Sequence record: NC_047880.1
Reading direction: 5' to 3' (one strand)
DNA: 64,000 nt
Part shown: piece after piece, positions 41,726 through 59,491 of the stretch
Layout of the letters: every line of letters begins with the position of its first letter
How positions within the stretch are numbered: position 1 is the first letter of the stretch
Translations under genes and position numbers: made by a program
Notes under the pieces: model-generated
The model's database searches: none
Seen by the model: the letters and a program-made list of their open reading frames with translations, nothing else
What the model was told of the DNA's origin: nothing

Positions 41726-41736
41726 GGCAGTACAGA

Positions 41737-41928: not shown

Positions 41929-42052
41929 TACATGCGGTTTGCCTGACGTGCCTCACACTCAACCACGCATTTGCGGGTGGCATAGTCGGGCTCTTTTTGA
42001 AATGTGTTTGTTTGACGCGCATTACATAAAGATAAACCAACAGGAGGCTGTT

Positions 42053-42391: not shown

Positions 42392-42395
42392 TGTG

Positions 42396-42454
42396 AAGTC
42401 TGCATAAAACAGGCTAAAATAGAGGTTGAGACATATATCAACACCTGTTATACT
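42396..42454 (+). promoter_or_regulatory. boxed promoter copy driving a non-coding segment
   Basis: AAGTCTGCATAAAACAGGCTAAAATAG, 23 nt, then TG-T-TATACT; TTGAGA -35. Confidence 0.85.
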
Positions 42455-42460
42455 TATTAG

Positions 42461-42600
42461 ACAGCGAGACATATGTGTTGCTGAGTTCGATTGATAGCTT
42501 TTAGCTGTATGTGAACTTTTCCCCCGCATACAGCTCTTTTTAAAGTGACTTGATTGAGGTTGCTTTAAAAAAGACCAGCTATTTGATGTATGCAAAAAGT
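42461..42600 (+). ncRNA. candidate structured small RNA
   Basis: ORF-free ~140 nt between two promoters; 5' hairpin plus a three-way junction (helices 42494-99/42577-82, 42503-11/42527-35, 42536-49/42559-73). Confidence 0.5.
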
Positions 42601-42643
42601 TGGACGAAATAGCGGTTGTGCAAAATGCTCTGCCTGCTATACT
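42601..42643 (+). promoter_or_regulatory. boxed promoter, variant copy
   Basis: TGGACGAAATAG, 22 nt, then TG-C-TATACT; TTGTGC -35. Confidence 0.75.
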
Positions 42644-42708
42644 TATATCTCTAGCGCAATAACGCGCACAACGTAGTATCTCATATACAATACTGAGGAG
42701 TATTAATC

Positions 42709-44247
42709 ATGGCTATCGAAACTAACACAAATCTGGTTGGCAAAACTATCGTTCTGTTGGACGGCACTAAAACTAAAATCACTGATGCAATCGCGTCTGG
42801 TTATAAAGTGAAAAGCCGCACAGCCCGCGTATCAACTCGTTGTGTAGTTAAAGACGGCGCTCACTTCCGTGAAATCGAGCGCATGAACATGAGCCAGTTA
42901 GAAGATACAGGCGAAGGTTACGTGAAAGTGAAAGACGCGAAAGCGACCAAGTCTGCTAAAACCGCGAAAGCTGAAAAGCCAGCTAAGACCGCGAAGACAA
43001 CCAAAGCAGATAAGAAACCTGCTAAGCCGTCTAAGAAAGACGAACCTGCTCCGAAAGTTCGCAGCAAGAAAGAAAAAGAAGCGAAGCAACAAGAAGATTA
43101 CTTGAGCCTCGCAACTGCGATCATTAAAGGCGGCAAGAAAGTTGCGCCTGTCGAAATCGAAGCAACCGACGCTGAACTGACAGACGCGATTGCAAAACGT
43201 CTGGTCGATGTTCTCGAAAATACCGAAATCGCCCGTGTAGCTGCTGACAACAAAACGCCGATCGCAAACGCAATCGCAATCACGTACGGCGCTGAGTTCG
43301 CCGAAGAAGCTAACGTGCTTCAAATCACGCTGAACCTGCAATACGCTAAGCCTGTAGTATCAGCGCCTGAGCCTGAGCTGGATGAAGCTGTTGCTCGTCG
43401 TGCTGCTAAACTCGCCGCTAAGAAAGTGGGCAAAGTGCTGGCGAAAGCGATCAAAACTGCATTCGACCTCGAAGATGCAAACGACCTGCTGCCTGGTACC
43501 GTGTTGCTCAAAGCAGAAGAAGAGTTTATCTTCTGCGGCGAAAGCGCGAAACATGCAGGCAAAGCGCTGCTGTACAAAACAGCCGACGATAAGTTTGCGT
43601 CTGTCGCTGCTGATGCTCTGACTGAATACGAAATTGTTCAGGAAGAAGCTGAGGCCGAAGAAGAGGAAGAGGAAGAGGAAGCTGATGAAGACCTCGATGA
43701 CTCTGACGCTTATTCATACATCGCCGTTGATAAAGACCAGCTCGCACTCGTTAACAAGAAAGTGACTGCTAAGTATCACGCTGCAACCGCTGAACGTTTC
43801 GGCGTTAGCGAAGAAGCTCTGGTCCCTGGCCTTGTCGTTACAGACGGCGACACAACGTTTGCTTATCTGGGCTTCGATAGCAAAGGCGGTATGCTCGTCA
43901 TTGACAATGAAGCCGAAGATCAAGATGTTCTGTGCTACTCAAAAGCAGACATTAAATCTCTGGTAGACTTCTCGCCAGTAGTTGGCGAAGCGGACGAAGC
44001 TGATTCTGACGACGAAGAAGACCTCGACGACGAAGAAGAAGCTGCTGATGACGAAGAGGAAGAGGAAGCAGACGACGAAGAAGAAGCTGATGATGACTTC
44101 GACTTCGGCTCTGATATCCCGTCAGAAGATCTTGAAGACCTGACCGCTGATGAACTGCGTGACCGTGTTGTTCACTTAGGTCTGTCTACCCAGAAGAAAG
44201 CAGATCGCATGGACGAAGACGAACTCCGCGCACTGCTGACTGAATAA
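42709..44247 (+). CDS. multi-domain protein with a K/A/P-rich linker and poly-D/E tracts
   Basis: SD hairpin AATACT-GAGG-AGTATT; 512 aa. Confidence 0.9.
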   Translation: MAIETNTNLVGKTIVLLDGTKTKITDAIASGYKVKSRTARVSTRCVVKDGAHFREIERMNMSQLEDTGEGYVKVKDAKATKSAKTAKAEKPAKTAKTTKADKKPAKPSKKDEPAPKVRSKKEKEAKQQEDYLSLATAIIKGGKKVAPVEIEATDAELTDAIAKRLVDVLENTEIARVAADNKTPIANAIAITYGAEFAEEANVLQITLNLQYAKPVVSAPEPELDEAVARRAAKLAAKKVGKVLAKAIKTAFDLEDANDLLPGTVLLKAEEEFIFCGESAKHAGKALLYKTADDKFASVAADALTEYEIVQEEAEAEEEEEEEEADEDLDDSDAYSYIAVDKDQLALVNKKVTAKYHAATAERFGVSEEALVPGLVVTDGDTTFAYLGFDSKGGMLVIDNEAEDQDVLCYSKADIKSLVDFSPVVGEADEADSDDEEDLDDEEEAADDEEEEEADDEEEADDDFDFGSDIPSEDLEDLTADELRDRVVHLGLSTQKKADRMDEDELRALLTE

Positions 44248-44332
44248 GCTGTACTCACTGTAAACTGATATGATAGCGGTCTATGAAGGCCGCTATACTT
44301 TGACTAATCGCGCTGATTGAGGAATCACAACT

Positions 44333-45568
44333 ATGTCAACTTCAAACAAAATGTTATTGAACGCCCGTGTACGTCGTCTTGATGGTACTGTTACTCACAT
44401 CAACAAGATCAACACTAACGGTTATAGCACTGATGCCAAGGGGCCTCAGATACCTGTTAAGCGTCTCGTTCTTGCAGGCAAATCTTTGAAAGAGATTGAA
44501 GCGCCGTTCGCAAAAGACGAGTGCATCATCTCACAAGGCGTTACAGTCAAACTGAACAAACGCCAGCAACGTGAACTCGCAGATAAAACGCTTGATGAAA
44601 AAGCGTTGCGTCCTGACTTCGGTAGCTTGGTGTTTATCGACCCTGACACAGGCAAAGCGACTGACGGCAAGAAAGTGAAAGTGAAAGCTGGTGCGAAAGA
44701 AAGTCTGAAAGAAACGCGCAAGCATAACAAAGAGCCGAAAGTTAAGAAAGCAGAGAAAGTTTCTGCCAAGAACGATCTGAAAGATTCACTCGACCTGATT
44801 GACGAACGTAAGGCGCCTAAGTCTGCGCTCGTTGAAATGCTCACTGCTACACTCGAAGGCGATACGACGAAAGAACAGCGTAAGCAATTCGCTGATGCGT
44901 TTGGTATCGACTGGAAAGCTGCTAAGAAGCTCGGCGGCAAGGGTATCGTTAAGCAACTCGGACGTAAAGCTGCGCAAGCTGCTGCTGACAAGCTGAATGC
45001 TACTGTGACCTCTGATGCGTTCATTAAGCAGATGCCTCCTGAGTTGAAGCGTCTGATGCGTGAAGGTTCGCTGACCCTGAACAAAACACAGATTGAGCGT
45101 GTACTGTCTGCGCTTGGTCTTGATACGAAGTTCTATGCTATCGCAATGCAGAACTTCCTGGGTAATCTGACACTGGCTATCAAGCCTGAAGAAGTGAAGA
45201 CTACGCAGAAGAAAAAGAAAGCTGCACGTCCGCAGTATGCGACTGATAAAGACGCGAAGCGCCGTGTAAAGAAGATGACAATAAAGCTGTTGGCGCCTGA
45301 TGCGAAAGGTATGAAGACTGCTAAGGCTCACCTGAAACAGGCGAAAGCAATCTTAGCCTCTAAGCTGGGTATCGCTACAAAAGATATTAAACGCGGTCTG
45401 ATTGTGTATCACAAGAACGGCGTTGATTACATGTTCGTGGCCTGTGATGTACGCGGTCCGATCTTCATCGACAAAGATGGTGACCCGGCAGTGTATACTT
45501 ACGCGAACCTGCAAGACACGTTCGACTTCACACTGACGCCAACCTCTGAGCTGGACGCCGCTGTATGA
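44333..45568 (+). CDS. Lys-rich protein, probable paralog of the 42709 protein
   Basis: SD hairpin TGATT-GAGG-AATCA; N- and C-terminal segments resemble those of the 42709 protein. Confidence 0.88.
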   Translation: MSTSNKMLLNARVRRLDGTVTHINKINTNGYSTDAKGPQIPVKRLVLAGKSLKEIEAPFAKDECIISQGVTVKLNKRQQRELADKTLDEKALRPDFGSLVFIDPDTGKATDGKKVKVKAGAKESLKETRKHNKEPKVKKAEKVSAKNDLKDSLDLIDERKAPKSALVEMLTATLEGDTTKEQRKQFADAFGIDWKAAKKLGGKGIVKQLGRKAAQAAADKLNATVTSDAFIKQMPPELKRLMREGSLTLNKTQIERVLSALGLDTKFYAIAMQNFLGNLTLAIKPEEVKTTQKKKKAARPQYATDKDAKRRVKKMTIKLLAPDAKGMKTAKAHLKQAKAILASKLGIATKDIKRGLIVYHKNGVDYMFVACDVRGPIFIDKDGDPAVYTYANLQDTFDFTLTPTSELDAAV

Positions 45569-45954
45569 AAACATCTGAAATAGTTATGACAGGTGTATTT
45601 GCTCAACTGTATGCGCGGCTAGTAATGGCCGCCATCAATAAAGTTCACATCTACTACATGGACTTAGCGCCTGTAGTGTTCGGTGTGCAATTCAGTAAGA
45701 TGGATAACTCGCAAGTAGAAGCTGTCTGGCAGATGCTGCGTATGTCCATGCAAATGGATATGCAACACAATAGACCGCCGCTCGCTGCGCTGTTTGTCAG
45801 TCGCGCTTCTGAGTTAAAGAAACCTGGCCGCTCATTCTTCAATGAGTATGAGAAGATTACAGGAATTAAGCTCTCCTACGAAGACTGGCAGAAGCTCGTT
45901 GAAGAAGTATGGGCGCATTATTCAATGCAAGATTTCGTTGGAGAGCAATCATGA
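45565..45954 (+). CDS. small putative DNA-binding protein (PPLxALxV...PGxxF family)
   Basis: RPPLAALFVSRASELKKPGRSFF motif; ATGA overlap. Confidence 0.55.
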   Translation: MKTSEIVMTGVFAQLYARLVMAAINKVHIYYMDLAPVVFGVQFSKMDNSQVEAVWQMLRMSMQMDMQHNRPPLAALFVSRASELKKPGRSFFNEYEKITGIKLSYEDWQKLVEEVWAHYSMQDFVGEQS

Positions 45955-46430
45955 AAAAGTTAAAAATCAAATCGTCAATCAGTCGCGGTGGTTACAAGCC
46001 GAAGTCTGATGACGAAGCCCGCAAGCTGGTAGTTGAGTTTATTCTCGGTACTATCGGTACTGCACCAACTGTTCTGAGCCAGACGTTAGTTCTGAACGTT
46101 GCGAACTACAACTGGCTGACGTCAATACCTGATACTGCTAAGCCTACGCAATCGAATCAATCAGTGTTGCATAAAACTGTAAAAGAACTTAATGAGTTCT
46201 GTCGATTGAACAAATTTCCACTGGGCTTACTAATTATGCCCCACACATCATCGAGTGACTATAGCGGTGATGAAGTGATAGCAATCCCGTGGAAACATGT
46301 TGCGGCGAATTCACAAAGTCAGTCCGCTGTTAATTCGATTTTCGAAACAGTGATCGCTGATGGATATCCGCAGTTCGTAGCCGATGCAAAAACTTTGCAC
46401 GTAGACGTAGAGGGTAGCGATGTTTTATGA
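45951..46430 (+). CDS. hypothetical protein
   Basis: GGAG SD, ATG at 45951. Confidence 0.75.
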   Translation: MKKLKIKSSISRGGYKPKSDDEARKLVVEFILGTIGTAPTVLSQTLVLNVANYNWLTSIPDTAKPTQSNQSVLHKTVKELNEFCRLNKFPLGLLIMPHTSSSDYSGDEVIAIPWKHVAANSQSQSAVNSIFETVIADGYPQFVADAKTLHVDVEGSDVL

Positions 46431-47700
46431 TCACGTATTCACGCATGACGAGCGGCAGGCGTTGCTGCTCCTTGCTGAATCATTCTTTCTGGTAAAAACT
46501 GAATGTCCCGACTATCTCAAAAAGTCTAAGCACTCGATTGAGATTCGACACACGATTAATCATCGTGGGAAAGAACGCCGGTCGGGTCACATTGTAACGT
46601 CATTCGTTCCGCGTATTCACATGAGCGTTATTCAGCGTCTTGTTCGTGTGATTCGTGACGACTACGATATCCGCGCAGCACATCACCTGAGCAAGTTGTT
46701 TGAACTCGGACTCGGCGTGCCGAAGCAACGTGACATTGCACTTTACCTGAGTGACTACTCAAAAGAAGCTGATCCGAAAGGTGTGGGTATGAAGTATATC
46801 CGCAAGCTGATTAATGAGTATCACCGCAAGTATCGTCGCAGCATGGCAGGTAGTCGCTGGATTATGCCAGCCGCGTATACTGCGAACATGATGCACATGC
46901 AGTCTTTCATTCACTTGAAAGAGAACGGTTATGCGAAGCAACTCAAAGTGCCTGATGGAATACCTGTGGTTCTCGTGTACAACAACACGAACCATGAGCG
47001 TTCTGAGTTTACTTTGTGTGACGCATTCATGATAAGCCCGCTGGGCTTCCCTGTACCGTTCGCGCAGATTGCATTACGTCCTGAATTCAAAGCTGTGCCG
47101 AAAACGTTTTGCTCGAAAGCACTTCGCGGTCGTGGTATGTACAGCATGGTGATGGGTGTTGTTCATTGGTCTGATACTGATTCTGTGAAGCACTTCCGCG
47201 AACTGATGGAAATTGATGCTGATAGCTATCTGTCATTGCTTGATAGTGAACAGTACATGGACCGACGTTCGCCTGAGTATCAAGCGCTGTGCGACAAGCG
47301 CGCCGAGTATAACGAACAACGTGTAGAGATGAATGAAGTCCTCGCTAAGTTCGGAACTACGAAGCGTATTCTTAAACCCGAGCAGCAGGCTAAGTTAGAC
47401 CGTGCTCTCAAGTTCTTCGCAGACCGTAAAGACTTCCTCAAGGAGTTTGATCAGTTTGAGAAGAAAGAACAGCACAAGGCAGCGAAGCAATTCGCAGTAG
47501 CCAGTGCGCAGTTCGCAGCAATTGACTGTGGTACTATCATGGACCGCACAACGTATATGGCGGTCAGTACGACACTCGATAAAGTTCACCACATTCTTGG
47601 GAAGTGGGGATTTACTACTGTCGATACTGTTAATGCTAGTTTGAAACACTCACTCATGACTTACGGCGAATCAAAAGCAACTCGTCGCTGGTCACTATAA
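46420..47700 (+). CDS. hypothetical protein with one Sel1-like repeat and a coiled coil
   Basis: AAHHLSKLFELGLGVPKQRDIALY resembles the Sel1 consensus. Confidence 0.7.
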   Translation: MFYDHVFTHDERQALLLLAESFFLVKTECPDYLKKSKHSIEIRHTINHRGKERRSGHIVTSFVPRIHMSVIQRLVRVIRDDYDIRAAHHLSKLFELGLGVPKQRDIALYLSDYSKEADPKGVGMKYIRKLINEYHRKYRRSMAGSRWIMPAAYTANMMHMQSFIHLKENGYAKQLKVPDGIPVVLVYNNTNHERSEFTLCDAFMISPLGFPVPFAQIALRPEFKAVPKTFCSKALRGRGMYSMVMGVVHWSDTDSVKHFRELMEIDADSYLSLLDSEQYMDRRSPEYQALCDKRAEYNEQRVEMNEVLAKFGTTKRILKPEQQAKLDRALKFFADRKDFLKEFDQFEKKEQHKAAKQFAVASAQFAAIDCGTIMDRTTYMAVSTTLDKVHHILGKWGFTTVDTVNASLKHSLMTYGESKATRRWSL

Positions 47701-47722
47701 CCTTTATCTGAGGAGATATGTA

Positions 47723-50700
47723 ATGTCTGATAACAACGAAAACTTGGGCGCATCAAGCCGCTTCGGCACAGAGTTACAACAACAAGTGACGAACGAACAA
47801 CGTCGCGCTAACTCTGCTGAAAGTGGTACCGTACATCGCAGCACTATCGTGGTGCTGACTACCCTGAACTCGAACGAAAAATATTCGTACATGTCTGCCG
47901 ACGAGCAACTGCACGAAAAGCCTATCATCGGTAAAATCATCGACCGTCTGCCTGCGCTGATCGAACGTGCATCAGGTCCGTCTGCTGATAAGAACAGCGC
48001 GTACTATCTGCTGCATCCGAACAACGGTGTACCGACCAGCATTGATGAACGTGTTAAGTTCGGCGACTCATTTGCTGCTATCGTTTCATATACTGTAAAT
48101 AAAGCAGTATCAGAGATGCACGGTACGCTGTCGCTTGCGCTGTTTGCTGCTGTGGATTCTTCTGACTTGTCAGACTTAGCTGCTGAGTTCGGTATCCACG
48201 CAATCGCAATCGTGCCTGCTGATAATAGCGGTGTGTTCATCAAAGCACTGACTGAACAACTCGAAGCGCTGCAATCTGTAAACGTACTGAGCATTGACGA
48301 CACTGATGGTACTCTGGACCGCGAAGTGATCGACTACGCTGCTCTGCCCGGCAATCCAGTAACTGTGGTATCTGGTGCTGTGCGTACTTTCATTACGCAA
48401 TCTATCGGTGGCGAAGTCATCGCTGCAATCCCAAATAACGGAGAGTTCAACGTGAAACAAAACACAATCAATCCTGCGCCAGTCGATCTTGAAGAAGACT
48501 TCGATAATGAAGACGAAGTTGAAGATCAGCAGGAAGACGGTGAAGAAAGTCCTGCGTCTGGTGCCGAGCTGTTCGGCTTCAAGTCAGAAACCCTGACCAC
48601 TGAACAGATGACCGAAGCTCTGGAAGCTGTCGGTTATGATTGTACCGAATTCGCAGAAGATGAACTGCGTGTATCGTTCGAAACCGAACAGGCGTTGTAT
48701 CTGTCTAAAGAAGACGCTGCGGAAGAAGAGTCTGATGAAGAAGAATCAGACGACGAAGAAGAAGCGGAAGAAGAATTCGATCCGTGCGCTTCTCTCGCTC
48801 AACTGCTGGCTGAAGAATCTTTCGACCGTCGCGCTCTGAAAGTCCTGGTACTGTCACAAGAACTGAAAGTGTTCAAGTCTGACACCGAAGAAACTCTGGT
48901 AGCGAAGCTGCTGGAAAACGTCGAAGATGCAACGCAGCAAGAGCTGTTTGAGCTGGTATCAACGTTCGTTGAACTGCTGGGTGAACGTGAAATCGAATGC
49001 CCTGCGCTGACTGCCGCGATCTCGTCTGACGACGAAGACACATCAGGTGATGATTCTGACGACGAAGAAGAGTCAGAAGAAGAGGAAGACGAAGATGAAG
49101 ATGAAGAATCAGAAGATGATTCCGAAGAAGCGCCTGTCTCTGACCTGACCTCTGTAACTGATCCGCTCGACTACTTCCAGTTTGCTGGTGGTGAACTCGA
49201 ACATCATCATCGTCTGGCCGCTGTTGAAGCGATGGGCGAAAACGTTGAAGGCCTGAACATCATTCAGGTAATGAAAGCGTTCAACCGCATTCAGCAACAA
49301 ACCAACGCAATCGAAATCACCGGCCTGTCCGTCAACGCCGATGTAGACGATGCAGAAGACGCGGGTCTGGAAGATCAGATTCGTGCGATTCTCGAAGCGA
49401 ACGAAAGCGGTGATGACGACGACACTGCAATCGAAGATCTGTGGACGCTGCTTGATTGTGCATCTGATGATCAAGACGCTACCATGATTGACGATATCGT
49501 TGCGTCTGGTACCGAAGAGCGTCACGCTACCGCTCTGCAATCTGCTGCTGAAACCTACGGCGTGGACATTTCTGAAATGTCTTACGAAGAAGGTCTGCTA
49601 GCATTCCTGGCCGAGTTCTTCTCTGAGGGTGATGCAGAAGAAGAATCCGAAGAAGAGTCGGACGATGAAGAAGCGGAAGAAGTTGATGACCGTGAAGGTT
49701 ACGAAGCTGACACTGCTGAAAACGCATCGAGCCTGCTGTTCCTGAAAGATATCGACAAGTCAAACCCAATCGGTCCGATGCTGTCTGTTGATATGGCGCA
49801 AGCGCTGATCATCAACTTCACGCTGACTGATGGCCGCACTTACACTGATATCGAAGCTGAACTGAACGATGTTAACGATGTTAACTATCGCATTCCGTTC
49901 AACGTAGGCGCTGCTGATAAAGCTGCCGGTTCTATGCACGTACCTGCCGGTATCATCGTTGATGTTATTCAACGCGCAGGGACCAGCCGCTTCTTAGCTG
50001 ATCCGAAAACGTTCGACGTTGGTTCATGGGCTGAAAGTCTGGAACAAACTCTCGACGCTGAGATTCAGAACTCTATCTACGAAGGCCGCATTCCTGATGG
50101 CGCTGACCCGCAGGAAGCTGGTGTTGTAGTCGGTGACTTCATCGACGAAGACGAGCTGGAAGAAGCTGCCGAGCTGGGTATTGACCCAAGTCAGTTTGAC
50201 GAAATGGGTACTGGTGATCATCTGCCGATTGCAAGCCTGTACAACGCACACACTCGCGTCCGTCCGGTTAACGATGGTGATAACTACATCGTCGCTCACA
50301 CCACTGTGTTGAACGTTGCACTGCCGGGCTTCTGGGGAGCTGAGTCTGCTGAGATTGTTGGCCGCATGATTCAAGCTGCTGTCAATCGCGTTATCAGTAG
50401 CATCGCAGATCGCACCGACGTTAAAGTCTACGCTGCGTTCACTCTGGAAGCTGCTGCTCTGCTGAACAATAGCAACCTGTTCGCTGCTATGTCTGTGTTG
50501 CGTGACATGGAGCGTGTACAAGCGTACTCTGCGGCTGACGCCGCTGCGTTCACCGAAACTGATGACGTGATCGAAACTGCATCTGCTCTGGATGATCGTG
50601 ACCTGCCGTTCACTGTCCTGACTTCTGGCATTGCACAAGCAACGTTCGAAAACGGCGGTGACCTGACTGTTCTGGTGCCATGCTTCGAAGAAGAAGCTGA

Positions 50701-50740
50701 GTACGAAGACGAAGCCGAAGACGACGGCGACGACGAATAA
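47723..50740 (+). CDS. very large, highly acidic protein (1005 aa)
   Basis: SD hairpin TATCT-GAGG-AGATA; repeated poly-D/E linkers between short helical modules. Confidence 0.92.
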   Translation: MSDNNENLGASSRFGTELQQQVTNEQRRANSAESGTVHRSTIVVLTTLNSNEKYSYMSADEQLHEKPIIGKIIDRLPALIERASGPSADKNSAYYLLHPNNGVPTSIDERVKFGDSFAAIVSYTVNKAVSEMHGTLSLALFAAVDSSDLSDLAAEFGIHAIAIVPADNSGVFIKALTEQLEALQSVNVLSIDDTDGTLDREVIDYAALPGNPVTVVSGAVRTFITQSIGGEVIAAIPNNGEFNVKQNTINPAPVDLEEDFDNEDEVEDQQEDGEESPASGAELFGFKSETLTTEQMTEALEAVGYDCTEFAEDELRVSFETEQALYLSKEDAAEEESDEEESDDEEEAEEEFDPCASLAQLLAEESFDRRALKVLVLSQELKVFKSDTEETLVAKLLENVEDATQQELFELVSTFVELLGEREIECPALTAAISSDDEDTSGDDSDDEEESEEEEDEDEDEESEDDSEEAPVSDLTSVTDPLDYFQFAGGELEHHHRLAAVEAMGENVEGLNIIQVMKAFNRIQQQTNAIEITGLSVNADVDDAEDAGLEDQIRAILEANESGDDDDTAIEDLWTLLDCASDDQDATMIDDIVASGTEERHATALQSAAETYGVDISEMSYEEGLLAFLAEFFSEGDAEEESEEESDDEEAEEVDDREGYEADTAENASSLLFLKDIDKSNPIGPMLSVDMAQALIINFTLTDGRTYTDIEAELNDVNDVNYRIPFNVGAADKAAGSMHVPAGIIVDVIQRAGTSRFLADPKTFDVGSWAESLEQTLDAEIQNSIYEGRIPDGADPQEAGVVVGDFIDEDELEEAAELGIDPSQFDEMGTGDHLPIASLYNAHTRVRPVNDGDNYIVAHTTVLNVALPGFWGAESAEIVGRMIQAAVNRVISSIADRTDVKVYAAFTLEAAALLNNSNLFAAMSVLRDMERVQAYSAADAAAFTETDDVIETASALDDRDLPFTVLTSGIAQATFENGGDLTVLVPCFEEEAEYEDEAEDDGDDE

Positions 50741-50752
50741 GCACAAGCCTGC

Positions 50753-50780
50753 AAGCGGCTCTTCGGGGCCGCTTCTCTTT
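50753..50780 (+). terminator. intrinsic terminator
   Basis: AAGCGGCTC-TTCG-GGGCCGCTT followed by CTCTTT. Confidence 0.85.
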
Positions 50781-50795
50781 GAAGGAAATGTGTAA

Positions 50796-51644
50796 ATGTC
50801 AGAAGCAAAGCAAGACAGTATTGACCACGGTGCAAAGCTCGCTGAATTGATTGGCAAGCAAAGCGCAGACTACGACAAGCTGCATTACAGCTATGTTGAA
50901 GTACGTGGCAAGAACATGGACTTGGAAGAAGAACTCGCCGAGTCCACCCGCCGTGAAACGAAGCTGCGCCTCGAAGCACGTAACACGCAGCGTCTTAACC
51001 GCGACCATGCGATTCGCCTCGAACGTATCATCGAGCAAGAACGTGGTGATAAGGTTGATGCGCAAAACGAAAATGCTCGTCTGCTTGTTCAGATCGATAA
51101 GCTGAATGAAACTGTAAAACAGAAGCATGTAGAGCAAGCGTCTGTTGTTCTGCAAATGATAATGTCAGAATCTGTCAGGCAGTTCGGTAATGTTGTTCAA
51201 GCTGTCTCGCACATGTTCGTCAATCGTCGTAAGTCAAAAGCCGACGCAGCCATGCAATCAACATTGCTGATGGACTATGTGACTAAACAGCCTTCACTGT
51301 ATCGCACTGTTGCGCAGTATTACAACTCAATCAATCTGCCTGTACCAACCGCAGCCGCGTTGAAGTTGCAAATGATTGAGCACGTTAAACAGAACGCGCA
51401 TCTGTATCTCAAAGACCCTGATATTCAAGCCTATCGTGAAGCATTGATTATCATGGTTACGCAACCGACTTCGCAAGTTAATCGCAGCCGCGTTATGACC
51501 AGTGTGCGTGATGGTTTCGACTACATCAATGTTTTCGATGCTGGGTTCGACGTAGCTATTCTGTCGGACAATACTTCGTGGGCAGCAACACTGTCTGACT
51601 CGCTGTTAGATATTTCGGGTCATCTTATCAGCGCGAATTTTTAA
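50796..51644 (+). CDS. coiled-coil protein
   Basis: Heptad-rich N-terminal half; AAGGA SD. Confidence 0.8.
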   Translation: MSEAKQDSIDHGAKLAELIGKQSADYDKLHYSYVEVRGKNMDLEEELAESTRRETKLRLEARNTQRLNRDHAIRLERIIEQERGDKVDAQNENARLLVQIDKLNETVKQKHVEQASVVLQMIMSESVRQFGNVVQAVSHMFVNRRKSKADAAMQSTLLMDYVTKQPSLYRTVAQYYNSINLPVPTAAALKLQMIEHVKQNAHLYLKDPDIQAYREALIIMVTQPTSQVNRSRVMTSVRDGFDYINVFDAGFDVAILSDNTSWAATLSDSLLDISGHLISANF

Positions 51645-51739
51645 TCTGTAAAAAATATTCGTAAAGTAATCTGTAAACACTAATTGAAGTTCACACTGAG
51701 CAACTCGCTCAACCGCATAAATCTGGAGCATTAAAGAAA

Positions 51740-52300
51740 ATGGCAAAAGCTACTAAAGGTACTAATCTGGTTCCGACCATTGTTTCCCGTATCGCAAAGA
51801 AAGCTGGTTCTATCGGAACTACCAAAGTTAAGCCAACTGATCTGCCGCACGACATTCTGATTGAAAGCGTTCACGCTTCTGAAATCGTCGGTTTCATCAC
51901 AGACCGTTCTGCTACCAGCGTAACGATTCGTCACAAACGTGGCCACGGTTCTTCTGCTCAAATCGTTTCTACTTTCGGTCCTGGTCAACTGCTGACTGTT
52001 CTGGGTGAAGCCGGTTCTCACGGTCAAGTCCGTGCAATCGTGACTGCGCCAGTGTGTGAGCTGAAAGGTTACACTGTTAAATTCGACGGCGCAATCATCA
52101 TCGCCACCTCAATCGAAACTGGCGAAGTGATTAACGTTAACACCAACCTGCCGGGCTACACTGTTCGCGCTACTGTTAACGAAAACGCTGCTGCTAAAAA
52201 GTACGGCACTGCTGCGCCAGTTAAAAACAAAAAAGTTGAAAAGTCTGACAAAGCCGGTAAATCTGCGAAAGCGATTAAAGGCGGCAAAGTAAAAAAGTAA
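51740..52300 (+). CDS. beta-rich protein with Lys-rich tail
   Basis: GGAG SD, downstream of tandem CTGTAAA motifs; ends KNKKVEKSDKAGKSAKAIKGGKVKK. Confidence 0.85.
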   Translation: MAKATKGTNLVPTIVSRIAKKAGSIGTTKVKPTDLPHDILIESVHASEIVGFITDRSATSVTIRHKRGHGSSAQIVSTFGPGQLLTVLGEAGSHGQVRAIVTAPVCELKGYTVKFDGAIIIATSIETGEVINVNTNLPGYTVRATVNENAAAKKYGTAAPVKNKKVEKSDKAGKSAKAIKGGKVKK

Positions 52301-52452
52301 CGGCGTCTGACGAAGACTTTTAATAGTCTCTGACGAATCTGTAAAGAATGATTATGCAGCAACATAAAAAATGTGTTGCTGCCGAATACAAACGAATCTG
52401 TAAATCTTAATTGAAGCAATAACGCTTCTCGAACTCAAAGGAAATTCGTATC

Positions 52453-53232
52453 ATGGCTAAAGCTAAATCCGCAAACGCAGCAACTCTGGTTCTGGCATCT
52501 ATCTTCGGTGTTGTTGTTGAGAACGCTTCGAACGAAGAGATTCAAAAGCTGCTGGCAGACGCGGGTCTGACTGTATCCGGTGGTAAAGTTGTTAAAGGCA
52601 AAGCTGCTAAAGCTGAAAAGCCTGCTGCTAAAGGTAAAGGCAAGAAAGCTAAAGCGCCGACCGTTGCTGAAATCGTTGCAGCGGTGAAGGAAGAAGAAGA
52701 ACTGGACATCTCTGCTGTGAGCGAAGATGATCTGCGCGCCGCAGTTGTGAAAGCTAAACTGGCCGCTGCCAAGAAAGCAAAAGCGCTGGACGAAGACGAT
52801 CTGCGCGAACTGCTGAACGAAGCAATGGGCGTCGAGTCAGAGGATGACGAAGACGACGAAGAAGAGGACGACGAAGAAGAAGAGGACGAAGACGACTCTG
52901 ACGACGAAGACGAAGACGACTCTGATGAAGAGGACGACGAAGACGACGAAGAAGAGGATGAAGACGACGAGGAAGAAGAAGAGGACGAAGACGACGAAGA
53001 CGAAGACGAGGACGAAGATGAACTCGACCTTGATTCGCTCGACGAAGACGAACTCCTGGCCCTCGTGATCGAACACAAGCTGGCGCCTAAGGCGAAAGCT
53101 AAGAAAATGGACGAAGACGAACTGCGCGAATTGTGCGAAGGTCACTTCGGCGGTGATGACGAAGAAGAAGAGGACGAAGACGACGAAGACGAAGACTTCG
53201 ACGATGAAGACGAAGACGAAGACGACGAATAA
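52453..53232 (+). CDS. acidic protein with poly-D/E tracts and two copies of a ~40-aa helical module
   Basis: About 60 consecutive residues almost all D/E between the modules; AAGGA SD. Confidence 0.9.
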   Translation: MAKAKSANAATLVLASIFGVVVENASNEEIQKLLADAGLTVSGGKVVKGKAAKAEKPAAKGKGKKAKAPTVAEIVAAVKEEEELDISAVSEDDLRAAVVKAKLAAAKKAKALDEDDLRELLNEAMGVESEDDEDDEEEDDEEEEDEDDSDDEDEDDSDEEDDEDDEEEDEDDEEEEEDEDDEDEDEDEDELDLDSLDEDELLALVIEHKLAPKAKAKKMDEDELRELCEGHFGGDDEEEEDEDDEDEDFDDEDEDEDDE

Positions 53233-53446
53233 GTCCTGACTCCCGGTCGCTGCCCTTCAAAGTAGAGATGCTTGCGAAGGGCTAATATTCGAAACTTCTT
53301 CTCGAATATTTTAGTAAAATGTTTTAAGTTTCCTGTACATCGTATGCTGATTATAGTAATGTACGAGTACAGGGAATTACCTGAATTGAATTTTGTATTT
53401 CATCCCGCGACAATACTCGCACAAAACAAATTGAACGGAGTTTATC
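53233..53446 (+). other. highly structured intergenic/leader region (four hairpins)
   Basis: Inverted repeats at 53252-58/53276-82, 53284-92/53302-10, 53329-38/53367-76 and 53391-96/53421-26. Confidence 0.55.
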
Positions 53447-54010
53447 ATGAGCAACAAAAAAATCATCAGCGGTCTGAACAAAAACCTGAAAGCCATCGCC
53501 AAATCTGAGCAGGCGCTGTCTAAGACCGTCGCGTCTACTTCTAAAGAAATCGAAAACCTGGGCGCACAACGTGCTGGTATCGAAGCGCAGATCGCAGAAC
53601 TGAGCGGCGCCGCTGCTGCACCGGTTAAAGCGGGCAAAGCTGCTAAAGTTGCCAAAGCTGAAAAGCCAGCTAAAGCAACCAAAGCTGACAAGAAAGCCGC
53701 GAAAGCTGAAAAGGCCGCTAAGCCTGCTAAAGCAGATAAGAAAGCTGCTAAAGCTGAGAAAGCCGCCAAGCCTGCTAAAGCAGACAAGAAAGCCGCCAAA
53801 GCTGAAAAGCCTGCTAAAGCAACCAAAGCAGATAAGAAAGCTGCTAAAGCTGAAAAACCTGCCAAGGCCGGTAAAGCTGCTAAAGCAGAAAAGCCGGGCA
53901 AAGCTGATAAAAAAGCTGGCAAGAAAGTGAAAGCTGAAAAGCCTGCTAAAGCCGGTAAGAAAAGCAAGAAAGCTTCCGAGTCCGAAGACTTCGACTTCGA
54001 CATGGAATAA
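53447..54010 (+). CDS. histone H1-like (AlgP/Hc2-type) K/A/P-repeat protein
   Basis: N-terminal coiled coil, then tandem KAEKPAKATKADKKAA / KAEKAAKPAKADKKAA units, then a short acidic C-terminus. Confidence 0.8.
   Translation: MSNKKIISGLNKNLKAIAKSEQALSKTVASTSKEIENLGAQRAGIEAQIAELSGAAAAPVKAGKAAKVAKAEKPAKATKADKKAAKAEKAAKPAKADKKAAKAEKAAKPAKADKKAAKAEKPAKATKADKKAAKAEKPAKAGKAAKAEKPGKADKKAGKKVKAEKPAKAGKKSKKASESEDFDFDME
53636..53960 (+). repeat. ~48-nt (16-aa) imperfect tandem coding repeat
   Basis: AAAGCTGAAAAGCC...AAAGCAGATAAGAAAGCTGCT units repeated about 5-6 times. Confidence 0.85.
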
Positions 54011-54041
54011 AAAGTAATCGCTGAGGCGGTTGCTTAAATTT

Positions 54042-54074
54042 AAGAGGGCAGCGCTGACGGGCGTTTGCCCTCTT
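54042..54074 (+). terminator. terminator-like hairpin
   Basis: AAGAGGGCAG-CGC-TGACGG-GCG-TTTGCCCTCTT; weak U tract. Confidence 0.6.
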
Positions 54075-54110
54075 GTCGTATCTAGCACAATTTTTTTGAA
54101 GGAAGTTCAA

Positions 54111-54608
54111 ATGACATCCGATGAACTTAACAAACATGAAGCAGGCGTTATGTCTCGGCTCGATGCGATTCCAAAGGCATCGGCACCACAAAAGAAACCT
54201 TCTTACTTCGAACTCGTATCACTCCGCATCGAAGCGTCTGGCCGTCTGGCTCGCGCTCTCTTCACTCTGCATTCTGCAAACGTTATCAGCATGAACTTAG
54301 CGCATGACTCGGCCGAGCAGGAAGCTCTGACAGTTGCTGAAAAGCACTGGGCTGATATCTGCAACGGCCTTGTGCCTGTACAAGACGGCACAGGTACAGT
54401 CAAGCTACGCGCTGATCTTCCTGCATGTATCGAAGCGTTTCGCATCGTCGTTATGGAATGCGCTCAACGTGCTGCACTCGATAAAGAATGCAGAGAGAAG
54501 ATGGCTCATGGCGAAGGCTTTAAGCTGCTGACTCAATCCACTCAACTCTCCCTTCCTGTTAAACATACCTGCAATGAGGACTGCGATCATGGCACAGAAG
54601 CTATCTGA
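54111..54608 (+). CDS. hypothetical protein
   Basis: SD in the loop of TTGAA-GGAAG-TTCAA, ATG at 54111. Confidence 0.75.
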   Translation: MTSDELNKHEAGVMSRLDAIPKASAPQKKPSYFELVSLRIEASGRLARALFTLHSANVISMNLAHDSAEQEALTVAEKHWADICNGLVPVQDGTGTVKLRADLPACIEAFRIVVMECAQRAALDKECREKMAHGEGFKLLTQSTQLSLPVKHTCNEDCDHGTEAI

Positions 54609-55353
54609 GCAAATCAACCGTTACTTCAATCTCATGGAATCAATCCGTAAGCAACTGTTTCGTGTTATGCCTATCTCTAACCGTTACTTGTGCATCGTGA
54701 GTTTCAGTACGCAGTATCAAGCGGTCATGAGCGATCTGGTGAGCAAAGAAAGTCTGCTGCCTGTTAAGCTGCTTGATGGTCTGACGGGTTCTGAGCTTGT
54801 TGCTTACGGCACAATCATGCAGGCAATCGAACAGTGGGTTGCTTCTGGTATGCAAGAGGATTTCCCTCTCGACCAGCGTCAGGATGTTTATTCCGAGTAT
54901 CGTCGTCTTACTACAGACGCAGAGCAGGAATCAACTGAACCTCAAGTCGCAGTGGTTCGTGCTGATACTCATACACGCGCGGCTATCTTACGCATGTCAT
55001 TCGCCTCGCTCGTTGAAGCTGCATCCGACCTTGGTATCTGCCACGATGTTCAGACGAAAGATCTCAAACACAAAGATCTGCAAGCTGCCGTTCTTAAACA
55101 CTTAGGCATGGCTCAGCCTGATGCGGAAGAACGTGATGCACAGGATATCGACAATATCAAAACAACGATTCTGTCTGCTACCGATGATGAACTCCGTGTT
55201 ATGTGTGCTGAGGCTCATGTAGTCGCTCGTAAAGAACTGCGCCTTGTCGGTCGTGACGAGATGATCAGCCTGATGTTCATCCACCATGACATTGAAGAAG
55301 AAGACGATGACTGCGGATGTGGCGAACTAAGCTGCATCTGTCACGCTCGCTAA
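54589..55353 (+). CDS. hypothetical protein with two short helical modules and a Cys-rich tail
   Basis: GAGG SD, ATG at 54589; ends DCGCGELSCICHAR. Confidence 0.8.
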   Translation: MAQKLSEQINRYFNLMESIRKQLFRVMPISNRYLCIVSFSTQYQAVMSDLVSKESLLPVKLLDGLTGSELVAYGTIMQAIEQWVASGMQEDFPLDQRQDVYSEYRRLTTDAEQESTEPQVAVVRADTHTRAAILRMSFASLVEAASDLGICHDVQTKDLKHKDLQAAVLKHLGMAQPDAEERDAQDIDNIKTTILSATDDELRVMCAEAHVVARKELRLVGRDEMISLMFIHHDIEEEDDDCGCGELSCICHAR

Positions 55354-55410
55354 GTCTGCATAAACGAGGACGAAACGTGAGTAGCGTTTAGTACCAGTCT
55401 GTGCTATAAT
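55352..55410 (+). promoter_or_regulatory. boxed promoter copy upstream of the topoisomerase genes
   Basis: AAGTCTGCATAAACGAGGACGAAACGT, 23 nt, then TG-C-TATAAT. Confidence 0.8.
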
Positions 55411-55480
55411 GTCATGAGACAAGTAGTGTCTGAATATGCTAATATCGAGTGGTAACGCTACTCACTTGGAGAATACGAAA

Positions 55481-57520: not shown

Positions 57521-57521
57521 T

Positions 57522-57824
57522 ATGCGCGGAACTAACTTTCCTGTAGTACATGGCACCGAGCACTGGGCAATTCCTTTGCTCGACTATCCAGACATTGTAT
57601 CACCTGAGTTGAGTGCGAAGCTCGATGCGTCACTTGCAGAGATTCGTCAGATTGCTGCACGGAGTGGAAAAGAAATGAAACAGAACGAAGCATTCATCGG
57701 TATTCAAAGCACAGCACAGAAGAAAGATGTTGTTGCCGTGCGTGTGCTCAAAGCTCGCAAGCCTGCCACTGACTCAATGTGTGTGATGGCGAAACTTGCA
57801 GCACTACCTAAAGGAGCGCAGTGA
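57522..57824 (+). CDS. hypothetical protein between the topoisomerase subunits
   Basis: GGAG SD, ATG at 57522, GTGA overlap with the A subunit. Confidence 0.7.
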   Translation: MRGTNFPVVHGTEHWAIPLLDYPDIVSPELSAKLDASLAEIRQIAARSGKEMKQNEAFIGIQSTAQKKDVVAVRVLKARKPATDSMCVMAKLAALPKGAQ

Positions 57825-59476: not shown

Positions 59477-59491
59477 TTAATCTGTAAATAC

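What the first reader, a model, noticed from the sequence alone, without database searches (positions are those of the whole stretch)
42709..55353. Cluster of oppositely charged disordered proteins: possible nucleoid or condensate-forming system
Within 12.6 kb there is an acidic 512-aa protein (42709), a Lys-rich 411-aa protein (44333), a 1005-aa very acidic protein (47723), a protein with a Lys-rich tail (51740), a poly-D/E protein (52453) and a histone-H1-like KAEKPAK repeat protein (53447). The cluster sits next to the type IIA topoisomerase. The same KAEKPA motif, encoded by AAAGCTGAAAAGCC, recurs in three of these genes (~42968, ~52610, ~53654). Established: polyanion/polycation disordered proteins such as prothymosin-alpha with H1, or nucleoplasmin with histones, form chaperone complexes and coacervates. 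Inference: a phage chromatin or replication-compartment kit of a DNA-compacting protein plus acidic chaperones or DNA mimics, in a phage with no shell or tubulin gene visible in this window.
Basis: partly seen in the sequence, partly recalled or inferred. Interest (0 to 1): 0.8.

Follow-up and report, generated by a model that had tools for sequence, protein, structure and literature searches.

The report
Conserved charge-alternating gene module in jumbo phages
A run of extremely acidic and extremely basic proteins beside the topoisomerase genes of Erwinia jumbo phage Y3 is a real gene module, conserved in order and in charge across a whole lineage of jumbo phages. It carries the same expression signals as the DNA-replication genes, but it has no detectable relative of known function, so its proposed role in organising phage DNA remains an inference.

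Summary
The window is the last 64 kb of Erwinia phage vB_EamM_Y3. "Disordered" is only partly right. gp320 is about 82% confidently folded, and gp322 has a confident beta core. Only gp323, gp324 and the linkers are low-complexity.

The cluster keeps its order and net charges in nine phages of at least seven genera. A compact five-to-six-gene version recurs in Pseudomonas phage PaBG and in three metagenomic contigs.

gp322 and gp323 carry the CTGTAAA motif that also precedes the polymerase, clamp-loader, primase, ligase and SSB genes. gp315 and topoisomerase II share an extended -10 early-type promoter. The motif of the structural-gene block is absent from the cluster. None of the PaBG counterparts is among its 14 virion proteins.

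Pfam, NCBIfam, PDB sequence searches and Foldseek give no known family. SAP/LEM-like modules stay below threshold.

Best reading (about 0.4): a replication-phase set of basic DNA binders and polyacidic partner proteins that interact electrostatically. Condensate formation is untested. Interest 0.6.

The parts
42709..44247 (+). gp315: 512 aa, net -56. Layout: N-terminal about 57-aa domain shared with gp316, basic K/A/P linker, two conserved blocks separated by poly-Glu, a DDDFDF motif, and a C-terminal SAP/LEM-like helix-extension-helix module.
   Evidence: alignment of 9 orthologues; N-domain shared with gp316: hhalign prob 91.6%, E 8e-7; SAP E 0.013-0.02, below cut-off
44333..45568 (+). gp316: 411 aa, net +31. 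Basic paralogue of gp315 at the N-terminal domain, with conserved blocks separated by Lys-rich linkers.
45625..47700 (+). gp317, gp318 and gp319 (109, 159 and 426 aa). Near-neutral or mildly basic conserved genes inside the cluster. gp319 (+15) holds the position of the 450-506-aa gene that precedes the acidic gene in PaBG, L017, L021 and L022.
   Evidence: no family hit; no sequence-level link to the distant positional counterparts
47723..50740 (+). gp320: 1005 aa, net -190. N-terminal alpha/beta domain (about 40-240), four small helical modules, a C-terminal alpha/beta domain (about 668-990), acidic linkers between them and an acidic tail.
   Evidence: AF2: mean pLDDT 74, 18% of residues below 50; no PDB fold match; BFVD: JA29 orthologue 6e-57; 356-aa PaBG protein 8e-6
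50796..51644 (+). gp321: 282 aa, near neutral. Conserved in the Y3-like phages.
   Evidence: no family hit
51740..52300 (+). gp322: 186 aa, net +15. Basic N-terminal arm, confident beta-rich core (33-150) and a Lys-rich disordered tail. It is the best marker of the module.
   Evidence: L017 homologue E 8e-24; 64 representative clusters
52453..53232 (+). gp323: 259 aa, net -90. Three helix-extension-helix-like modules, a short basic linker, a poly-Asp/Glu tract of about 77 aa and an acidic tail with a conserved EDFDDE motif.
53447..54010 (+). gp324: 187 aa, net +30. N-terminal helical (coiled-coil-like) segment of about 55 aa, (KAAKAEKPAKAAKADK)n repeats, and a conserved acidic-aromatic C-terminal tip.
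   Evidence: no linker-histone domain; Motura analogue
54111..55353 (+). gp325 and gp326 (165 and 254 aa, mildly acidic), lying between the charged genes and topoisomerase II. gp326 is shortened or absent in some relatives.
55481..59476 (+). Type IIA topoisomerase: large subunit gp327, small ORF gp328 and subunit gp329.
42446..42643 (+). Two tandem early-type promoter-like sites (TGnTATACT extended -10, each preceded by TGCA(T/A)AAA..GG(C/A)(T/C)(A/G)AAATAG) upstream of gp315. The same type lies at 55402-55410 before topoisomerase II.
   Evidence: TGnTATA(A/C)T strict in Y3, AD1, Alexandra; degenerate in others; upstream TGGnCAAAAT element widely kept; 9 such sites in the genome, all on the + strand at record 207-257 kb
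51643..51677 (+). Two copies of the AATCTGTAAA promoter-like motif upstream of gp322.
   Evidence: conserved in 7 of 8 phages
52336..52404 (+). Two copies of AATCTGTAAA upstream of gp323, flanking a stable hairpin.
   Evidence: 8 of 8 phages; hairpin -17.3 kcal/mol, z -5.1
53327..53378 (+). Conserved stem-loop in the leader or promoter region of gp324.
   Evidence: 18 pairs, 5 with compensatory changes in 9 phages; -23 kcal/mol, z -5.65; no Rfam family
50753..50782 (+). Terminator-like hairpin followed by UUCUCUUU after gp320. Similar hairpins follow gp315 (about 44273-44296), gp323 (about 53252-53282) and gp324 (54012-54075).

Best explanation
The cluster is an early/middle-expressed, non-virion module that acts on DNA during replication in this lineage of jumbo phages, which has no annotated nucleus-shell genes.

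Basic members (inferred): gp322 (beta-rich core with basic arms), gp324 (helical oligomerisation segment plus a long Lys/Ala/Pro/Glu repeat tail) and gp316 bind phage and/or host DNA through their cationic regions.

Acidic members (inferred): gp323, gp315 and gp320 carry poly-Asp/Glu tracts strung between small helix-extension-helix-like modules and globular domains. They bind the cationic regions and so act as competitors or chaperones that tune DNA binding, solubility and hand-over. The short acidic-plus-aromatic tips would act as docking or auto-inhibitory peptides, in the way described for the acidic tip of bacterial SSB.

Shown: the module exists; its order and charges are conserved; it carries replication-type promoter motifs; and acidic tails are fused to basic cores in relatives.

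Inferred: DNA binding, mutual binding, and any higher-order assembly such as a coacervate or replication factory.
For: 1. Conservation.
- Order, gene lengths and net charges are kept in nine phages of at least seven genera, while protein identity falls to 33-55%.
- A compact version in the same order recurs in PaBG gp131-gp124 and in contigs L017, L021 and L022.
- Sequence homology is shown for gp322 (E 8e-24) and gp324 (E 2e-14, compositionally biased). Fold-level similarity is shown for gp320 against the PaBG protein (Foldseek 8e-6).

2. Expression signals.
- CTGTAAA(T/C)A lies 40-55 nt upstream of the starts of PolA, clamp loader, primase, NAD-ligase, SSB, the recombination endonuclease and the sigma factor, and also of gp316, gp322 and gp323. 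30 of its 31 CTGTAAATA copies are co-oriented with transcription.
- The motif is conserved before the gp322 and gp323 orthologues.
- gp315 and topoisomerase II share an extended -10 promoter type.
- The structural-block motif CTAATTT (20 of 24 copies on the coding strand of that block) is absent from the cluster.
- Each small gene is bracketed by hairpins.

3. Not virion. None of PaBG gp124-131 is among the 14 virion bands reported for that phage (PMC7412058).

4. Polyanion-polycation coupling. In the gp322 family (64 representative clusters) the N-arm is basic in 63 of 64. Ten members carry long net-acidic C-tails (down to -79), and many others end in an Asp/Glu run plus F/L/M/Y/W.

5. Replication context.
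- A gp322-family member lies 0.6 kb upstream of topoisomerase II on an unrelated 205-kb contig.
- The module lies next to the exonuclease, sigma, SSB and UvsX genes in PaBG and L017.
- The phage SSB itself carries a tail of about 160 aa made of alternating poly-acidic and poly-basic blocks.

6. The SSB acidic tip as a docking and self-competing peptide is taken from PMC7145534.
Against: - No protein of the module matches any DNA-binding family. Pfam, NCBIfam and PHROGs give nothing of known function. Profile searches of PDB sequences are empty. Foldseek against the PDB gives nothing below E 0.04.
- The SAP/LEM likeness is sub-threshold: 3 of 33 module copies each, best E 0.0016.
- Promoter classes are assigned only by which genes the motifs precede. 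No transcript data exist.
- The element after the motif at gp322 (CTAATTG) differs by one base from the structural-block motif, so late expression is not excluded.
- The PaBG proteome lists only Coomassie-visible bands.
- A second extremely acidic protein sits in the head module, which shows that this phage also uses polyanions in the capsid.
- Homology of the distant gp319-like and gp320-like genes rests on position and, for gp320, on fold only.
Confidence: 0.4

Rival explanations
1. Host take-over or anti-defence decoys. The polyacidic proteins (gp320, gp323, gp315) act as polyanionic DNA-like decoys that soak up host DNA-binding proteins such as nucleoid proteins, restriction or other defence nucleases, or SSB-interacting enzymes. 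The basic proteins coat or silence host DNA.
For: - Tandem sigma-70-like extended -10 promoters before gp315 suggest very early expression by the host polymerase.
- Extreme negative charge.
- Acidic-aromatic tips resemble in kind the bacterial SSB tip that docks many host enzymes (PMC7145534).
- The surrounding block is full of small early-type genes of unknown function.
Against: - No match to any known DNA-mimic or anti-restriction family in Pfam or PHROGs, and none in PDB sequence or fold searches. PADLOC, the defence-system library, was not searched.
- Known DNA mimics are, to my knowledge, small folded proteins rather than poly-Asp/Glu tracts.
- Counter-defence genes are usually variable, yet this module is a stable core across hosts as different as Erwinia, Dickeya, Yersinia and Pseudomonas.
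- gp322 and gp323 carry the replication-gene motif rather than the early type.
Confidence: 0.22
2. Packaged or capsid-associated proteins. The charged proteins are internal head, scaffold-like or ejected proteins that neutralise or organise DNA inside the large capsid.
For: - Jumbo phages package many proteins.
- Y3 has another very acidic protein (gp141, net -138) in the head module.
- The terminase and portal genes lie in the same + strand block.
- No virion proteome of the Y3-like phages is held in the library.
Against: - The structural-block motif is absent from the cluster, and the replication-type and early-type motifs are present.
- The PaBG counterparts are not among its 14 virion proteins.
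- The module neighbours the exonuclease, sigma, SSB, UvsX or topoisomerase genes in every genome seen.
Confidence: 0.1
3. Accessory factors specific to topoisomerase II or recombination. The module supplies DNA-binding and acidic regulatory subunits that work directly with the phage type IIA topoisomerase (or with SSB/UvsX), not a general DNA-organising system.
For: - Adjacent to topoisomerase II in all nine Y3-like genomes.
- Charged proteins of similar kind flank topoisomerase II in Motura.
- A gp322-family gene lies just upstream of topoisomerase II on a 205-kb contig.
- gp315 and topoisomerase II share a promoter type.
Against: - In PaBG the module is about 8 kb from topoisomerase II, and in L017 no topoisomerase lies within 10 kb.
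- The Motura proteins show no detectable homology to the folded Y3 domains, apart from the gp324-like one.
Confidence: 0.15
4. Nothing specific. On this reading these are fast-evolving low-complexity ORFs whose composition is a by-product of repeat expansion, grouped by chance.
For: - Tandem repeats underlie the acidic and basic tracts.
- The shared 14-mer is not conserved in relatives.
Against: - Order, lengths and net charges are conserved from Erwinia phages to Pseudomonas phage PaBG and metagenomic contigs.
- The promoters and a leader hairpin with compensatory changes are conserved.
- The models contain confident folded domains.
Confidence: 0.03

Closest known systems
Bacterial SSB, and from my own knowledge T4 gp32 and T7 gp2.5: a DNA-binding core, a disordered linker and an acidic C-terminal tip
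   Same: A basic or DNA-binding-like core is followed by a flexible charged extension that ends in an Asp/Glu run plus an aromatic or hydrophobic residue. This is seen in gp324 and in most gp322-family members. In SSB the tip docks partner enzymes and competes with DNA for the binding domain (PMC7145534). The cluster also has a replication-gene context and replication-type promoter motif.
   Different: No OB-fold or SSB family match. Y3 gp322 itself lacks the tip. The phage has a separate gp32-like SSB (gp242). The tips are not identical to the SSB tip.
Eukaryotic polyanion/polycation chromatin pairs: linker histone H1 with prothymosin-alpha, nucleoplasmin with histones, HMGB1 with its acidic tail (from my own knowledge and the finding's text)
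   Same: Long Lys/Ala/Pro-rich tails in gp324. Uninterrupted poly-Asp/Glu tracts of 70-110 residues in gp323 and its relatives. Acidic tails fused to basic cores in some gp322 relatives, as in HMGB1.
   Different: No linker-histone, nucleoplasmin, HMG-box or prothymosin domain was detected. The proteins are phage-encoded and form a fixed five-to-six-gene array. Binding and chaperoning were not tested.
SAP / LEM / HeH helix-extension-helix DNA-binding modules
   Same: Modules of about 40 aa in gp315, gp323 (two or three), gp320 and PaBG gp131, with two amphipathic helices around a Lys-rich connector. SAP and LEM are the two most frequent Pfam matches.
   Different: Every score is below the Pfam gathering cut-off (best 15.5 bits against 23.9). 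Only 3 of 33 copies match either family. The helices are net acidic.
Bacterial H1-like Lys/Ala/Pro repeat proteins (AlgP, PhaF-type phasins, the HupB tail; from my own knowledge)
   Same: An N-terminal helical segment followed by a K/A/P-rich repeat tail in gp324. Arg/Ala/Pro repeats form the N-arm of some gp322 relatives.
   Different: No family-level hit in NCBIfam or Pfam. The protein search returned no named relative. The gp324 repeats contain regular Glu/Asp residues and end in an acidic-aromatic tip.
DNA-mimic anti-restriction proteins (Ocr, ArdA, Arn; from my own knowledge)
   Same: Very acidic phage proteins expressed before late genes.
   Different: No homology. These proteins are far larger and built from low-complexity tracts plus unrelated folded domains. 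They are conserved as a core module rather than as a variable accessory.

Membership tests
Linker histone H1 / H1-like proteins | Winged-helix globular domain (Pfam Linker_histone) | tested here: not met
   gp324 gave no such hit even at E up to 10. NCBIfam gave none.
Linker histone H1 / H1-like proteins | Long Lys/Ala/Pro-rich basic tail | tested here: met
   gp324 has 52 Lys and 29% Ala in 187 aa, with a 16-aa repeat in 4.9 copies. This is a compositional likeness only.
SAP / LEM (HeH) domain | Profile match at or above the Pfam gathering score | tested here: inconclusive
   SAP best E 0.0016 and LEM best E 0.0037, each in 3 of 33 module copies, all below the cut-offs. The profile of the modules found no solved HeH structure.
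SSB-type proteins with an acidic C-terminal tip | OB-fold DNA-binding core | tested here: not met
   No Pfam or NCBIfam SSB hit. The Foldseek best hit for the gp322 core is E 0.04 with TM 0.18.
SSB-type proteins with an acidic C-terminal tip | C-terminal Asp/Glu run ending in an aromatic or hydrophobic residue | tested here: met
   All nine gp324 orthologues have it, as do PaBG gp124, gp125 and gp126 and many of the 64 gp322-family representatives. Y3 gp322 itself lacks it.
DNA-mimic anti-restriction proteins (Ocr/ArdA type) | Membership of the known families by sequence or fold | tested here: not met
   No Pfam or PHROG function, no PDB sequence match and no PDB fold match for gp320. gp323 and gp315 were not modelled.
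Virion / internal head proteins | Presence in purified particles | not testable with these tools
   There is only indirect evidence. The PaBG counterparts gp124-131 are absent from its 14 identified virion bands. No proteome for Y3-like phages is held in the library.
Virion / internal head proteins | Late (structural-block) promoter motif upstream | tested here: not met
   CTAATTT is absent from the cluster. The CTGTAAA and extended -10 types are present instead. There is a one-mismatch variant at 51680.
Phage-nucleus system (chimallin shell, PhuZ tubulin) | Shell and tubulin genes in the genome | not tested
   None of the 333 annotated Y3 features carries such a name, and the phage encodes a sigma factor rather than an annotated multisubunit RNA polymerase. 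No profile search was run for them.
Biomolecular-condensate scaffolds (complex coacervation) | Oppositely charged multivalent low-complexity regions | tested here: met
   Net charges and blocky patterning, and the block-polyampholyte tail of SSB. This is a necessary feature, not a sufficient one.
Biomolecular-condensate scaffolds (complex coacervation) | Demonstrated demixing or foci | not testable with these tools
   No data exist.

The most novel reading that the evidence does not exclude
A conserved five-to-six-gene electrostatic kit alternates polycationic DNA binders with polyanionic partners. Together with an SSB that carries a block-polyampholyte tail, it builds a membrane-less, coacervate-like replication compartment or phage chromatin in the PaBG/Y3 lineage of jumbo phages, which has no annotated protein shell. 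This would be a second, independent solution to the problem that the phage nucleus solves in Chimalliviridae.
Probability: 0.2. Interest if true: 0.85.

Novelty: categorically new. Interest (0 to 1): 0.6.

Why it matters
Jumbo phages outside the nucleus-forming family are poorly understood, and it is not known how they organise and protect a replicating genome of about 260 kb. This work defines a module with clear bounds, a reliable marker gene (the gp322 family), conserved regulatory signals and a simple physical logic of alternating charge. The module is present from Erwinia and Dickeya phages to Pseudomonas phage PaBG. That turns a vague idea of disordered charged proteins into a set of concrete objects whose expression, location and structure can be measured. 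If the module does organise DNA by electrostatic partnering, it would be the first phage-encoded counterpart of the histone-chaperone or H1/prothymosin type of system, and a candidate for condensate-based compartmentalisation in bacteria infected by phages. If it is instead a decoy system or capsid cargo, the marker and the module definition still give those fields a new conserved family.

Tried and rejected
Led nowhere:
- Pfam, NCBIfam and PHROGs on all cluster proteins and their neighbours gave only PHROG families of unknown function.
- Profile searches of PDB sequences with six alignments found nothing significant.
- Foldseek of the gp322 and gp320 models against the PDB found nothing below E 0.04.
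- The large protein search with gp324 was swamped by low-complexity words and returned four hits, none informative by name.
- Rfam found nothing over 41500-60000.
- The original Y3 paper is not held. No virion proteome or transcriptome for Y3-like phages was found. A review of jumbo phages does not mention condensates or histone-like proteins for this group.

Considered and rejected:
- That the shared 14-mer marks a conserved motif or recent exchange. It is not conserved in orthologues.
- That the N and C domains of gp320 are a detectable duplication (hhalign prob 2%).
- That the Motura charged proteins are homologues of gp316, gp322 or gp323. Only low-complexity matches were found, so they are treated as analogues, except for the gp324-like one.
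- That genomes with an acid-tailed gp322 have lost the separate poly-Asp/Glu gene. They keep it.
- That the CTAATCG upstream of Y3 gp316 is a late-type site. It is not conserved in relatives.

- In one search I used a nine-letter peptide recalled from memory as a text-search term inside a paper. The paper holds it once.
- None of these strings was used as a query in any sequence, structure or alignment tool, and nothing has been deleted.
- One call failed on mistyped coordinates and was corrected.

Full report
IDENTITY AND OBSERVATION

[quoted passage not shown] Window position equals record position minus 197,365. The six genes of the finding are annotated gp315, gp316, gp320, gp322, gp323 and gp324, all as "hypothetical protein".

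| Gene | Length (aa) | Net charge |
|---|---|---|
| gp315 | 512 | -56 |
| gp316 | 411 | +31 |
| gp320 | 1005 | -190 |
| gp322 | 186 | +15 |
| gp323 | 259 | -90 |
| gp324 | 187 | +30 |

The type IIA topoisomerase genes follow directly (gp327 and gp329). It encodes a K-A-E-K-P stretch in basic linkers whose sequence is not conserved in orthologues. I read it as composition plus codon usage, not as a motif.

The gp324 repeat has a 48-nt period with 4.9 copies. In a rough ORF set of the whole genome, gp320, gp323 and gp315 rank first, third and seventh in acidity. The second is a head-module gene (gp141, -138), so extreme acidity is not exclusive to the cluster.

ARE THE PROTEINS DISORDERED?

Only in part.
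- The AlphaFold2 model of gp320 (29-sequence alignment) has mean pLDDT 74, and only 18% of its residues fall below 50. Those residues are the acidic linkers. The rest forms an N-terminal alpha/beta domain, four small helical modules and a C-terminal alpha/beta domain.
- gp322 has a beta-rich core at pLDDT around 90, flanked by a disordered basic arm and a Lys-rich tail.
- Alignments of nine orthologues show that gp315 and gp316 are mosaics of conserved blocks and charged linkers. They share an N-terminal domain of about 57 aa (BLASTP 2e-4; hhalign 91.6%, E 8e-7). They are therefore an acidic and a basic paralogue, at least in that domain.
- gp323 and gp324 are mostly low-complexity.
- Charges are strongly segregated in gp315, gp320 and gp323, and well mixed in gp316, gp322 and gp324.

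SMALL MODULES AND SHORT MOTIFS

gp315 (C-terminus), gp323 (two clear copies plus a third at the N-terminus) and gp320 contain units of about 40 aa: two helices around a Lys-rich connector. SAP and LEM are the commonest Pfam matches, but they match only 3 of 33 copies each and stay below the gathering scores. No solved relative was found. Membership of the helix-extension-helix class is therefore inconclusive.

A second recurring element is an Asp/Glu run with Phe. It appears inside gp315, in the tail of gp323 and at the very end of gp324 in all nine phages.

CONSERVATION

The whole stretch from gp315 to topoisomerase II is syntenic in nine genomes covering at least seven genera: Y3, AD1, Alexandra, SNUABM_2, SNUABM_7, Yoloswag, SNUABM_5, Yersinia phage fHe-Yen9-02 and JA11. 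Gene lengths are nearly constant. Net charges are very stable while identity falls to 33-55%. For example, gp320 ranges from -174 to -201, gp323 from -89 to -105 and gp324 from +26 to +30.

In 5.8 billion clustered proteins, gp320 and gp322 have only 35 and 26 related clusters, none with a Pfam domain or a functional name.

More distant evidence came from three routes.

1. The gp320 model matches a 356-aa uncharacterised PaBG protein in BFVD (E 8e-6).
   - The PaBG annotation table has a single 1071-bp gene, gp127.
   - The supplementary GenBank file of PMC7412058 shows the same array around it. gp131 is gp315-like and has an internal helix-extension-helix-like stretch. gp128 is 459 aa. gp127 is acidic. 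gp126 is gp322-like, with a Lys tail and an acidic tip. gp125 is 150 aa and mostly poly-Asp/Glu. gp124 has a helical head, Lys-rich repeats and an acidic-aromatic tip.
2. A weak gp324 hit led to a 245-kb metagenomic contig (L017) with the same order of genes. A sigma factor, an SSB and UvsX lie 6 kb downstream.
3. A profile search with the gp322 family over 1.84 billion representatives gave 64 clusters at E of 1e-3 or better. Contexts of three of them were informative. Two short contigs (L021, L022) show the same five-gene order. A 205-kb contig has a family member 0.6 kb upstream of split GyrB-like and ParC-like genes.

Sequence-level homology to the distant arrays is demonstrated for gp322 (E 8e-24), gp324 (E 2e-14, biased), SSB and sigma. 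For gp315 it is weak. For gp319 and gp320 it is absent at the sequence level, so those equivalences rest on position and, for gp320, on fold.

In Achromobacter phage Motura, charged proteins of the same kinds flank topoisomerase II, but only the gp324-like one is detectably similar.

Adjacency to topoisomerase II is therefore common but not universal. The module itself is the conserved unit.

EXPRESSION SIGNALS

I held the whole Y3 genome and compared upstream regions. Three motif classes separate cleanly.

1. (A/T)ATCTGTAAA(T/C)A lies 40-55 nt before start codons. The core CTGTAAA(T/C) has 49 copies against about 19 expected, and 30 of the 31 copies of the stricter CTGTAAATA are co-oriented with the local genes.
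   - It precedes PolA, a second polymerase gene, the clamp loader, the primase, the NAD-ligase, a recombination endonuclease, a ParB-like gene, the sigma factor and SSB.
   - It also precedes gp316, gp322 (two copies) and gp323 (two copies).
   - It is conserved before the gp323 orthologues in 8 of 8 phages and before the gp322 orthologues in 7 of 8.
2. A bipartite element ends in an extended -10 (TGnTATAAT or TGnTATACT). It has nine copies, all on the + strand between record positions 207 and 257 kb. Two lie in tandem before gp315 and one before topoisomerase II.
3. CTAATTT has 20 of its 24 copies on the coding strand of the structural block, upstream of sheath, baseplate, tail and head-associated genes. 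The capsid gene has a close variant. This motif is absent from the cluster.

Stable hairpins follow gp315, gp320, gp323 and gp324. The assignment of these classes to early, middle and late rests on the functions of the genes they precede, not on transcript data. A one-mismatch variant of the structural motif lies just after the replication-type motif of gp322.

VIRION QUESTION

No particle proteome of a Y3-like phage is available in the library. For PaBG, the 14 proteins identified from purified particles are gp202, 215, 240, 213, 76, 257, 94, 191, 83, 261, 80, 81, 214 and 263 (PMC7412058). None belongs to gp124-131. This is weak negative evidence, because only abundant bands were analysed.

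WHAT THE gp322 FAMILY ADDS

Across the 64 representatives, the arm before the beta core is basic in 63. Ten members carry long net-acidic C-terminal tails (down to -79 over 112 residues). Many others have a Lys-rich tail that ends in an Asp/Glu run plus F, L, M, Y or W. One polypeptide therefore often combines a cationic nucleic-acid-binder-like core with a polyanionic tail or tip.

That arrangement is described for bacterial SSB, whose nine-residue acidic tip docks at least 17 partner proteins and also binds back to the DNA-binding domain (PMC7145534). From my own knowledge the same holds for T4 gp32, T7 gp2.5 and HMGB1.

The separate poly-Asp/Glu gene is still present next to acid-tailed family members. 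The tail and the free polyanion are therefore not simple substitutes for each other.

INTERPRETATION

The evidence best fits a replication-phase, DNA-associated module in which cationic binders (gp322, gp324, gp316) and polyanionic partners (gp323, gp315, gp320) interact electrostatically, with acidic-aromatic tips as docking or auto-inhibitory peptides.

It is made somewhat more attractive by the phage SSB, whose tail of about 160 aa alternates poly-acidic and poly-basic blocks (the same is seen in L017). But nothing here tests demixing or compaction.

The rivals are host-directed polyanionic decoys, capsid cargo, and dedicated accessory factors for topoisomerase or recombination. They remain open and are weighed in the report sections.

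COMPARISON WITH KNOWN SYSTEMS, AND NOVELTY

No defining sequence or fold feature of linker histones, SAP/LEM domains, SSB, DNA-mimic anti-restriction proteins or acidic histone chaperones was met. Only compositional or short-motif likenesses were found. The module works, at most, like those systems; it is not a member of any of them. As a conserved, ordered, charge-alternating gene array in a phage lineage it has, as far as the held literature shows, not been described.

SLIPS

See the section Tried and rejected. Short motif strings recalled from memory appeared in my reasoning, and one was used as a text-search term. None was used as a sequence query.

Noticed in passing
window 467-1729 (+), gp242: The phage SSB (gp32-like body, no Pfam hit) carries a C-terminal tail of about 160 aa made of alternating poly-Asp/Glu and poly-Lys/Ser blocks. 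Net charge is about 0, 49% of residues are charged, and kappa is 0.44. The same kind of tail is on the SSB of metagenomic contig L017 (16905-18143). The gene has the CTGTAAA motif upstream.
   Followed up: partly
window 53327-53378 (+), upstream of gp324: A conserved stem-loop (-23 kcal/mol, z -5.65) with 18 consensus pairs, 5 of them with compensatory changes across nine phages. It encloses an A/T-rich loop that resembles a -10 element. It has no Rfam family. It may be a regulatory or RNA-stabilising element for the gp324 transcript.
   Followed up: partly
whole Y3 genome (L012-L015 plus window): Three promoter-like motif classes separate by gene function and strand. They are CTGTAAA(T/C)A (replication and nucleotide-metabolism genes), an extended -10 bipartite type (nine sites, all at record 207-257 kb on the + strand) and CTAATTT (structural block).
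   Followed up: partly
Y3 record 106082-108157 (- strand; L014:6082-8157), gp141 annotated 'ATPase': A 691-aa protein with net charge -138, lying between the capsid and virion-protein genes and the head protease. It is the second most acidic ORF of the genome. Its PaBG counterpart gp82 carries similar spurious names. It is probably a scaffold-like or core protein, and the 'ATPase' label looks like a low-complexity artefact.
   Followed up: no
L016 (Achromobacter phage Motura) 11525-12331, 12836-13723, 18723-19184: Three strongly charged proteins flank the topoisomerase II genes: +41; -66, with a basic N-terminus, a beta domain and a poly-Asp/Glu/Ser tail of about 110 aa ending in an EDFDDE-type motif; and +31, with a coiled coil plus KAEKPAKA repeats. 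Only the last is detectably similar to a Y3 protein.
   Followed up: partly
L009:14707-15213 (Erwinia phage pEa_SNUABM_5): The gp324 orthologue is annotated 'putative valyl-tRNA synthase'. This is almost certainly a compositional false match to a Lys-rich coiled-coil region.
   Followed up: no
window 42053-42391 (+), gp314, and the 317-nt gap 42392-42708: The intergenic region before gp315 is unusually long. It holds two tandem extended -10 sites and a stem-loop-rich stretch. An overlapping longer ORF call starts at 41939.
   Followed up: no
L017 1494-2015: A further 173-aa protein (+24) with a helical head and KAPKAPKAPK-type repeats lies 2 kb upstream of the module in the metagenomic phage. 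This is a second protein with a gp324-like architecture in the same region.
   Followed up: no
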